Below are positions 6,812-55,700 of a stretch of DNA of 64,000 bases, piece by piece. Every line of letters starts with the position of its first letter. Position 1 is the stretch's first letter. The notes beneath the pieces were generated by a model. The model saw nothing but the letters and a program-made list of their open reading frames with translations, ran no database searches and was not told the DNA's origin. The DNA is from Bispira polyomma (Eukaryota), in the NCBI GenBank assembly GCA_965649765.1, contig OZ287752.1, positions 87,234,001-87,298,000 of the forward strand, in the 5' to 3' direction. A program made the position numbers and the translations under genes.

Positions 6812-6974
6812 CCACTCCTTTGGTTATGACTGCCAAAAGCGAGCCAACATTCAGATGCTAGATAACGACACAGCCGTGTTTGCCGCGGGAAACCTGGTAC
6901 AGATCCTCAACATCAAGACTAAAGAACAGATCTACTTGAGGAGTACAAGTGGAGGGGGCATTGGGGCTATAACA
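6812..6974 (+). CDS. CFAP44: CFAP44 exon (window exon 1)
   Basis: cag|C CAC TCC TTT GGT ([12 protein letters not shown]...GIGAIT)|gtgagt. Confidence 0.93.

Positions 6975-55700: not shown

What the first reader, a model, noticed from the sequence alone, without database searches (positions are those of the whole stretch)
6941..55493. Gene-wide, polarised tandem amplification of splice junctions ('splice-site echo' arrays) across CFAP44
Seen: about 16 of 32 donors (exons 1,2,4,5,6,9,12,14,17,18,19,20,23,30,31,32) and about 11 of 33 acceptors (exons 3,6,10,14,15,17,21,24,27,31,33) sit at the edge of a tandem repeat or local duplication. The unit is made from that exon's own edge plus adjacent intron, usually retaining GT or AG. 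Units are unrelated between junctions (about 19-130 bp, 2 to ~39 copies), so this is not one mobile family. Donor copies lie only downstream of the true donor, acceptor copies only upstream of the true acceptor, and the spliced ORF stays intact. Many other junctions have a minisatellite abutting them without exon sequence. Inference: either a mutational process is focused on exon-intron boundaries (for example spliceosome-, R-loop- or nucleosome-edge-coupled slippage), or duplications arise everywhere and boundary-spanning ones persist. Part of the polarity follows from geometry and selection. Either way the spliceosome must ignore dozens of near-identical decoy sites by strictly choosing the exon-proximal one. 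I do not know of this being described as a systematic gene-wide architecture.
Basis: partly seen in the sequence, partly recalled or inferred. Interest (0 to 1): 0.92.

Follow-up and report, generated by a model that had tools for sequence, protein, structure and literature searches.

The report
Splice-junction "mirage" repeats in annelid CFAP44
In a working cilia gene of what is probably an annelid worm, about half of the exon ends and a third of the exon starts have been copied head-to-tail, splice signal included, into the neighbouring intron; this kind of repeat is already known from amphioxus ("mirages") and the copies decay like junk, but they sit on splice junctions 2-5 times more often than chance, and their origin is still unexplained.

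Summary
Observation confirmed. The CFAP44 gene (33 coding exons in the window, frame open, collinear with homologues) has junction-spanning duplications at about 15-16 of 32 donors and 11 of 33 acceptors. All extra copies lie in the intron. Of 66 repeat clusters, 36 touch a junction (10.5 expected; 2.7-fold in short introns alone). It is genome-wide: in 82 other exons, about 20% of donors and 10% of acceptors carry one (4.6- and 2.3-fold; sense strand only). CFAP44 is a dense case. The structure is not new: it is the amphioxus "mirage" (PMC3087553, PMC3902484), and this scan noted it before on other pieces of this genome. Copies decay neutrally (CpG transitions, stop codons; GT/AG neither kept nor purged), and one array has 12, 24 and 17 units in three near-identical paralogues. 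The polarity follows from geometry. One new point: acceptor units always include at least 20 intron bases (0/21 shorter, against 12/31 at donors; P=0.0007), which fits selection for a branch point in every unit. Breakpoints are not concentrated at the junction itself; G-richness and CpG do not predict them. Unrelated animals show independent mirages in the same gene. No RNA or raw reads could be examined.

The parts
6812..55701 (+). CFAP44 (WDR52) gene, 33 coding exons in the window; the N-terminal exon(s) were not found in 1-6811
6941..7305 (+). Donor 1 mirage: 36-mer (34 exon + 2 intron bases), about 10 units, all GT kept, in frame
9030..9451 (+). Donor 2 mirage: 56-mer (33 exon + 23 intron), 7.5 units
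9631..10209 (+). Acceptor 3 mirage: 30-mer array holding AG plus 4 exon bases (about 12 units) and a 129-base duplication with 62 exon bases (AG lost)
12327..12699 (+). Donor 4 mirage: 53 exon bases, 3 copies at offsets 96, 182, 299
13020..13644 (+). Donor 5 mirage: 21-mer (12 exon + 9 intron), 21 copies, 19 with GT
13926..14084 (+). Acceptor 6 duplication, 101 bases (39 exon)
14187..14477 (+). Donor 6 mirage: 31-mer (18 exon), 9.5 units
15470..15990 (+). Donor 9 array: 20-mer starting at the donor (1 exon base), 26 units, decoys weaker than the true site
15989..16164 (+). Acceptor 10 mirage: 73-mer (25 exon), 2 copies
16835..17158 (+). 18-mer array ending 11 bases before acceptor 11 (abutting)
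17626..17950 (+). 20-mer array ending 7 bases before acceptor 12 (abutting)
18078..19219 (+). Donor 12 array: 29-mer (4 exon bases), 39 units
21189..21370 (+). Acceptor 14 mirage: 27-38-mer (15 exon), 7 copies
21470..21941 (+). Donor 14 mirage: 33-base first unit then 19-mer, 17 copies, 8 with GT
21956..22371 (+). Acceptor 15 mirage: 43 exon bases, 2 copies (offsets 131, 238)
23306..23626 (+). 32-mer array starting 10 bases after donor 16 (abutting)
24315..24467 (+). Acceptor 17 duplication, 101 bases (39 exon)
24507..25193 (+). Donor 17 mirage: 140-base unit (81 exon) with nested 13-mer, 5 copies
25459..25771 (+). Donor 18 mirage: 32-mer (18 exon), about 10 units
25971..26513 (+). Donor 19 mirage: 12-32 exon bases, 6 copies among 11-mer repeats
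33422..33535 (+). 13-mer array ending 14 bases before acceptor 20 (abutting)
33736..34005 (+). Donor 20 array: 20-mer (9 exon), copies lack the donor GT
35711..36341 (+). Acceptor 21 mirage: 80-mer (43 exon + 37 intron), 7 copies, all AG kept
37961..38819 (+). Donor 23 mirage: 36-42-mer (up to 36 exon), 22 copies, 19 with GT
38981..39147 (+). Acceptor 24 duplication, 83 bases (41 exon)
41012..41322 (+). G-rich array starting 11 bases after donor 26 (abutting)
41706..42141 (+). Acceptor 27 mirage: 46-mer (18 exon + 28 intron), 8 copies, all AG kept
46004..46123 (+). 34-mer array with acceptor-like units ending 5 bases before acceptor 29 (abutting)
46315..46829 (+). 53-mer G-rich array starting 9 bases after donor 29 (abutting)
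47406..47642 (+). Donor 30: 101-base exon end copied downstream; the junction is deleted in the copy
47720..47935 (+). Acceptor 31 duplication, offset 164 (47 exon bases)
48047..48206 (+). Donor 31 duplication, 92 bases (68 exon), GT lost
48405..49759 (+). 40-mer array (34 units) ending 15 bases before acceptor 32 (abutting)
49902..50095 (+). Donor 32: GT-microsatellite plus two gapped copies of the exon end
55305..55506 (+). Acceptor 33: degenerate copies of the acceptor with about 13 exon bases (offset 103 scored; a second seen by eye near 55316)

Best explanation
These are 'mirage' minisatellites: neutral by-products of short tandem duplication (20-170 bases) that in this genome begins or ends inside exons more often than in intron interiors, later expanded and contracted as ordinary variable-number repeats. 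Step 1 (inferred): a short duplication forms with one breakpoint in an exon and the other in the next intron; the cause of the exon bias is not shown (exon chromatin or transcription-linked breaks are candidates). Step 2 (shown by geometry and homology): the copy continuous with the rest of the exon stays the used one, so all extra copies lie in the intron; exon-internal duplications and ones that lengthen the exon are removed by selection. Step 3 (inferred from the data): at acceptors only units long enough to give the true AG its own branch point and pyrimidine tract (20 or more intron bases) survive, because the 3' site is found by scanning from the branch point; donors have no such limit, so they are commoner, shorter and expand further. 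Step 4 (inferred): exon definition and the short exon piece in each copy favour the outer, authentic site, and most stray decoy use is frameshifted and degraded. Step 5 (shown): copies mutate neutrally and change copy number quickly.
For: Enrichment 3.4-fold in the gene, 2.7-fold in introns under 2 kb; 4.6-fold at donors and 2.3-fold at acceptors in 82 other exons; 4.5-fold among arrays at least 90% identical and 6.7-fold among arrays of 3 or more copies. Array starts fall inside the last 150 exon bases (1.3 per kb) and not in the first 50 intron bases (0 of 82 donors). Position of the donor within the unit is uniform (KS P=0.35); acceptor units never hold fewer than 20 intron bases (0/21 against 12/31, P=0.0007); scanning model in PMC1431707. 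Splice motifs in flank arrays are enriched on the sense strand (donor 4-fold, acceptor 2.4-fold) far more than on the antisense strand (2-fold on 7 counts, 0.9-fold). Neutral decay: CpG transitions odds ratio 2.9, P=5e-5; exon-versus-copy pN/pS 0.34-0.37 against 0.39-0.47 expected for a neutral copy beside a constrained exon, with 12 stop changes; mismatch at G and T of decoy donors 37/504, like neighbouring positions. Length change: 12, 24, 17 units in three 99%-identical paralogues. Exon-proximal sites are collinear with homologues at nearly all junctions. 101 of 113 intact decoys in the window would shift the frame or meet a stop.
Against: No mechanism for the exon bias was found: neither G-richness after the donor nor CpG at breakpoints differs in the 82-exon sample. 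The background is 1.5-kb flanks with unannotated exons and transposon insertions, not random genome. The youngest class (at least 95% identical) is too small to test (1 donor of 25 arrays). The acceptor enrichment outside CFAP44 is only marginal (P=0.02). The 11 abutting arrays of CFAP44 have no counterpart in the 82-exon sample (1 case) and are not explained, unless they are old mirages. Splice-site use was not observed.
Confidence: 0.62

Rival explanations
1. Retention, not mutation: duplications arise evenly, but intron interiors turn over fast (transposon insertion, deletion) while the exon-anchored copy cannot be lost and stays recognisable, so junction-spanning arrays accumulate.
For: In many two-copy cases the exon part still aligns while the intron part has decayed. 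Long introns 19, 20, 27, 32 hold insertions, and one 26-mer family in intron 27 is split into three pieces. The enrichment drops from 3.4 to 2.7 when long introns are left out.
Against: A frozen exon copy can at most about double detection time, yet the excess is 4.5-fold among arrays at least 90% identical and 6.7-fold among multi-copy arrays, whose best match is mostly intron to intron. Median identity is the same for free and junction arrays (0.92, 0.91). Protected intron sequence just after donors shows no excess of array starts. At least 18 'free' arrays look like mirages of neighbouring exons, so the background is overstated.
Confidence: 0.2
2. A splicing-coupled mutational process: breaks or slippage are placed at the splice site itself by the spliceosome, R-loops or paused polymerase, so the junction seeds its own duplication.
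For: The effect is tied to the transcribed strand. In CFAP44 11 arrays abut a junction within 20 bases (3.3 expected, P=0.0004). 7 of 31 donor units hold 10 or fewer intron bases. An unrelated animal has an acceptor-31 copy ending at the same exon base (+47) as here.
Against: Breakpoints are spread over 1-101 exon bases and 2-290 intron bases; the donor position in the unit is uniform. Abutting arrays are almost absent in the 82 other exons. No G-rich signal outside CFAP44. Sense-strand enrichment is expected from any exon-linked process.
Confidence: 0.12
3. A selected splicing device: ladders of alternative donors and acceptors tune expression or diversify the protein.
For: Most copies keep GT or AG (83/104 donors, 30/32 acceptors in the window) and 57 score as high as the true site. 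Donor 1 has 5 in-frame, stop-free alternatives.
Against: GT/AG mismatch equals the neighbouring rate; unit lengths are multiples of three at the chance rate for donors (10/31) and below it for acceptors (3/21); copies carry stops and frameshifts; copy number differs between near-identical paralogues; orthologous junctions in four other animals mostly lack them or have unrelated units.
Confidence: 0.04
4. Assembly artefact (collapsed or re-joined reads).
For: Raw reads could not be examined.
Against: Copies differ from each other by substitutions with a CpG-transition signature; differences fixed in all copies are mostly synonymous (7 against 3); other assemblies show the same structures; amphioxus mirages were confirmed by re-sequencing (PMC3902484).
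Confidence: 0.02

Closest known systems
'Mirage' minisatellites of amphioxus (Adh3, globins BflGb6 and BflGb9, troponin C, PGBD5; PMC3087553, PMC3902484; original description PMID 12087171, not readable here)
   Same: Tandem repeats of an exon-intron boundary, at 5' and at 3' sites, units of 10-160 bases, many but not all keeping GT/AG, unstable in length, coding sequence undisturbed, origin stated as unclear.
   Different: Known from a handful of cephalochordate genes, one or two junctions each in the papers read. Here a probable annelid, about 27 junctions of one gene and 10-20% of junctions genome-wide, with a measured excess and a donor/acceptor asymmetry that I did not find described.
Intron gain by tandem duplication of a proto-splice site (Rogers model, as cited in PMC3087553)
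   Same: A few units here are almost wholly exonic and start at a GT-containing motif (window donor 1, locus L017), and could in principle move or add a junction.
   Different: No new intron or shifted junction is seen: the used sites are collinear with homologues.
Ordinary intronic minisatellites (variable-number tandem repeats)
   Same: Same unit sizes, identity and copy-number behaviour as the free arrays in these introns.
   Different: The first unit overlaps a coding exon and the repeats carry splice signals.
Recursive-splicing sites and mutually exclusive duplicated exons
   Same: Multiple splice signals in series inside an intron.
   Different: Copies hold only one exon edge, not whole exons or AG-GT ratchet points, and they decay neutrally.

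Membership tests
mirage minisatellite | Tandem repeat whose unit spans a real exon-intron boundary of the host gene | tested here: met
   junctions validated by homologue collinearity
mirage minisatellite | Occurs at both 5' and 3' exon boundaries | tested here: met
   13-16 donors and 11 acceptors
mirage minisatellite | Unit length about 10-160 bases, unrelated between loci | tested here: met
   units 20-165 in the window, each from its own junction
mirage minisatellite | Many but not all units keep GT/AG | tested here: met
   83/104 donor and 30/32 acceptor copies
mirage minisatellite | Length instability of the array | tested here: met
   Shown for another array of this genome: 12, 24, 17 units in L006, L007, L008; not tested between alleles of CFAP44
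mirage minisatellite | Normal splicing of the mRNA is undisturbed | not testable with these tools
mirage minisatellite | Somatic instability (reported for amphioxus Adh3) | not testable with these tools
   Needs reads from several tissues
functional alternative-splice ladder or duplicated alternative exon | Copies keep frame and splice signals under selection | tested here: not met
mobile element family (e.g. introner) | One sequence family shared between insertion sites | tested here: not met
   Each unit matches only its own junction; consensus units unrelated
CFAP44 (host gene) | Best matches to CFAP44/FAP44 in both the WD40 and the coiled-coil parts | tested here: met
   exons 1, 10, 31 searched separately

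The most novel reading that the evidence does not exclude
In this animal a transcription- or splicing-coupled process in the germ line places short tandem duplications at exon edges at several times the intronic rate. This would make splice junctions true mutational hot spots for duplication across invertebrate phyla, a steady source of raw material for intron gain and sliding, and a natural library of thousands of identical competing splice sites.
Probability: 0.2. Interest if true: 0.75.

Novelty: new member of a known kind. Interest (0 to 1): 0.45.

Why it matters
Mirages have been an amphioxus curiosity with an origin their describers call unclear. A genome with one at about every fifth donor and every tenth acceptor makes the origin testable: breakpoints, germ-line expression and polymorphism can be counted. 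It also gives a large natural test of how the spliceosome chooses among identical sites; the 20-base floor at acceptors is a first sign of that filter. In practice, such copies mislead gene prediction and read mapping.

Tried and rejected
The spliced model was searched exon by exon, by reference; the joined step was left out. One script returned nothing and was rerun. The original mirage paper (PMC117041) is not held. Rejected or unsupported: G-rich/R-loop signal after donors (none in the 82-exon sample); CpG at breakpoints (6/50, 9.8 expected); dependence on distance to the chromosome end (P=0.39, only 5 loci within 2 Mb); a strand-independent DNA motif as seed; preference for in-frame units; N-terminal CFAP44 exons in 1-6811 (none). 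Four orthologue look-ups returned no DNA. Four literature searches for a systematic description outside amphioxus found none; the library lacks most subscription journals.

Full report
The host gene. The window is G000:C5:87,234,001-87,298,000 of a 1.035-Gb assembly, about 0.85 Mb from the end of that contig. The genome has extracellular-haemoglobin linker domains, which fits the annelid assignment of earlier notes; I did not identify the species. On the + strand 33 coding exons run from 6812 to 55701, all with GT-AG introns and an open frame from exon to exon. Exons 1, 10 and 31, searched separately, match solved CFAP44/FAP44 chains. Exon peptides laid on full-length homologues are contiguous (offset 0, or +1 for a split codon) at nearly every junction, including those with repeats; junctions 9|10, 12|13, 19|20, 23|24 and 24|25 lie in variable linkers and are less well fixed. 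So the exon-proximal sites are the conserved ones. The joined model was not searched.

The observation. A detector for copies that span each junction found downstream copies at 13 donors and upstream copies at 11 acceptors, and none in the opposite direction. In the scored set 83 of 104 donor copies keep GT and 30 of 32 acceptor copies keep AG; 57 score at least as well as the true site on matrices trained on this gene. Nearly half of the intron sequence lies in repeat clusters.

More than chance. After collapsing each array to one unit and placing units at random, 10.5 of 66 clusters should span or abut a junction; 36 do (15 span donors, 10 span acceptors, 11 abut within 20 bases). In the 28 introns under 2 kb it is 30 of 37 against 11.1. 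To see whether this is special to CFAP44, I took 84 exons of myosin, kinesin and CCT genes from 13 contigs with 1.5-kb flanks; 82 donors and 82 acceptors could be placed. 16-18 donors and 8-10 acceptors carry such a duplication, 4.6 and 2.3 times the flank background. The background is overstated, since at least 18 'free' arrays hold a strong sense-strand donor and are probably mirages of neighbouring exons. The excess holds among arrays at least 90% identical and among multi-copy arrays. CFAP44 is denser than the sample (donors P=0.06, acceptors P=0.015), and its abutting arrays have almost no counterpart there.

Real and decaying. Differences between exon and copies show methyl-CpG transitions (29/94 against 96/716 sites), a biological signature. 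pN/pS between exon and copies is 0.34-0.37 with 12 stop changes, close to the 0.39-0.47 expected when the copy is neutral and the exon takes mainly synonymous changes; changes shared by all copies are mostly synonymous. The decoy GT mismatches at the rate of its neighbours (copies are not independent). Three 99%-identical paralogous myosin exons on three contigs carry the same 53-base donor array at 12, 24 and 17 units.

How it most likely works. Polarity needs no special mechanism: a unit made of exon end plus intron start, repeated head to tail, leaves the first copy continuous with the exon, and any case in which a later copy was used would lengthen the exon and be selected against. The open question is the excess. 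Array starts fall inside the last 150 exon bases and not in the first 50 intron bases, and the donor lies at a uniform position within the unit. This points to one breakpoint inside the exon rather than a cut at the splice site. G content after the donor and CpG at breakpoints do not predict a mirage in the sample, so the R-loop and methylation ideas have no support here. Acceptors differ: their units are longer, have fewer copies, and never hold fewer than 20 intron bases (0/21 against 12/31 at donors, P=0.0007); three acceptor units in another animal also hold 36-57. The simplest reading is selection: the 3' site is found as the first AG after the branch point (PMC1431707), so a unit too short to carry a branch point would hand splicing to an upstream copy. 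Tolerance of the other decoys fits exon definition and the finding that a duplicated site with little flanking exon loses to the outer site (Reed and Maniatis 1986, PMID 2427200; reference seen, content from my own knowledge). 101 of 113 intact decoys in the window would shift the frame or meet a stop.

Other animals. The last exons of CFAP44 in four other invertebrate assemblies were annotated locally. One unnamed animal has mirages at 3 of 5 acceptors (83-, 86- and 79-base units, up to 15 copies), another at 1 of about 7 donors; a third and the brittle star Amphiura have none. The copies match their own species' exons (exon 31 is only 61-74% identical to the window's), so they arose independently. 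None of these contigs looks human.

What is known. Tandem duplications of exon-intron boundaries were named mirages in amphioxus; they occur at 5' and 3' boundaries, keep many splice signals, vary in length, do not disturb the mRNA, and their origin is called unclear (PMC3087553; PMC3902484). The structures here meet every defining feature I could test. I found no genome-wide description and none outside amphioxus in the held literature. The name came to me from earlier notes of this scan, which report the same pattern on other pieces of this genome; I checked the papers and redid the counts.

Verdict. A real, unusually dense example of a known kind of repeat, in a new phylum, with a measured excess at junctions whose cause is open and with a donor/acceptor asymmetry that points to a splicing filter. 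New member of a known kind; interest 0.45.

Noticed in passing
window 47720-47935 and L096:1550-1798: The acceptor-31 copy ends at the same exon base (+47) in this genome and in an unrelated animal (exon 74% identical), with different unit lengths (164 and 83) and each copy matching its own exon. One coincidence; possibly a shared short microhomology.
   Followed up: partly
window 42464-45640: One 26-mer repeat family occurs in three pieces across intron 27 (about 42470, 43080-43160, 45570-45610), apparently split by two insertions; the last piece lies close to acceptor 28.
   Followed up: partly
window 320-4600, minus strand: Possible small antisense gene upstream of the first CFAP44 exon found: a short exon ending in a donor near 4500 and an open frame at 2684-2905 with a signal-peptide-like start and several cysteines. 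Already noted as s1-680913.
   Followed up: no
window 27654-29039 and 34330-34870: A 143-base tandem array and related sequence around an A/T-rich stretch; looks like ends of a non-autonomous DNA transposon family.
   Followed up: no
L006, L007, L008 (C11, C8, C13): A myosin gene segment is present in three near-identical copies on three chromosomes (recent segmental duplication); a CCT gene is duplicated on C1 (L076, L080, 98% identical).
   Followed up: partly
genome: More than 40 cytochrome P450 genes match as single, intron-less open frames of about 500 codons, many in tandem clusters.
   Followed up: no
window 50100-50900: A probable LTR-like or other mobile insertion starts right after the last donor-32 copy.
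   Followed up: no
L093:3824-4122 and L094:4538-4836: Two other animals lack the intron between window exons 28 and 29.
   Followed up: no
window 56292-56553: A 65-mer array just after the likely polyadenylation region whose unit holds an AATAAA-like signal; possibly a 3'-end analogue of the mirages.
   Followed up: no
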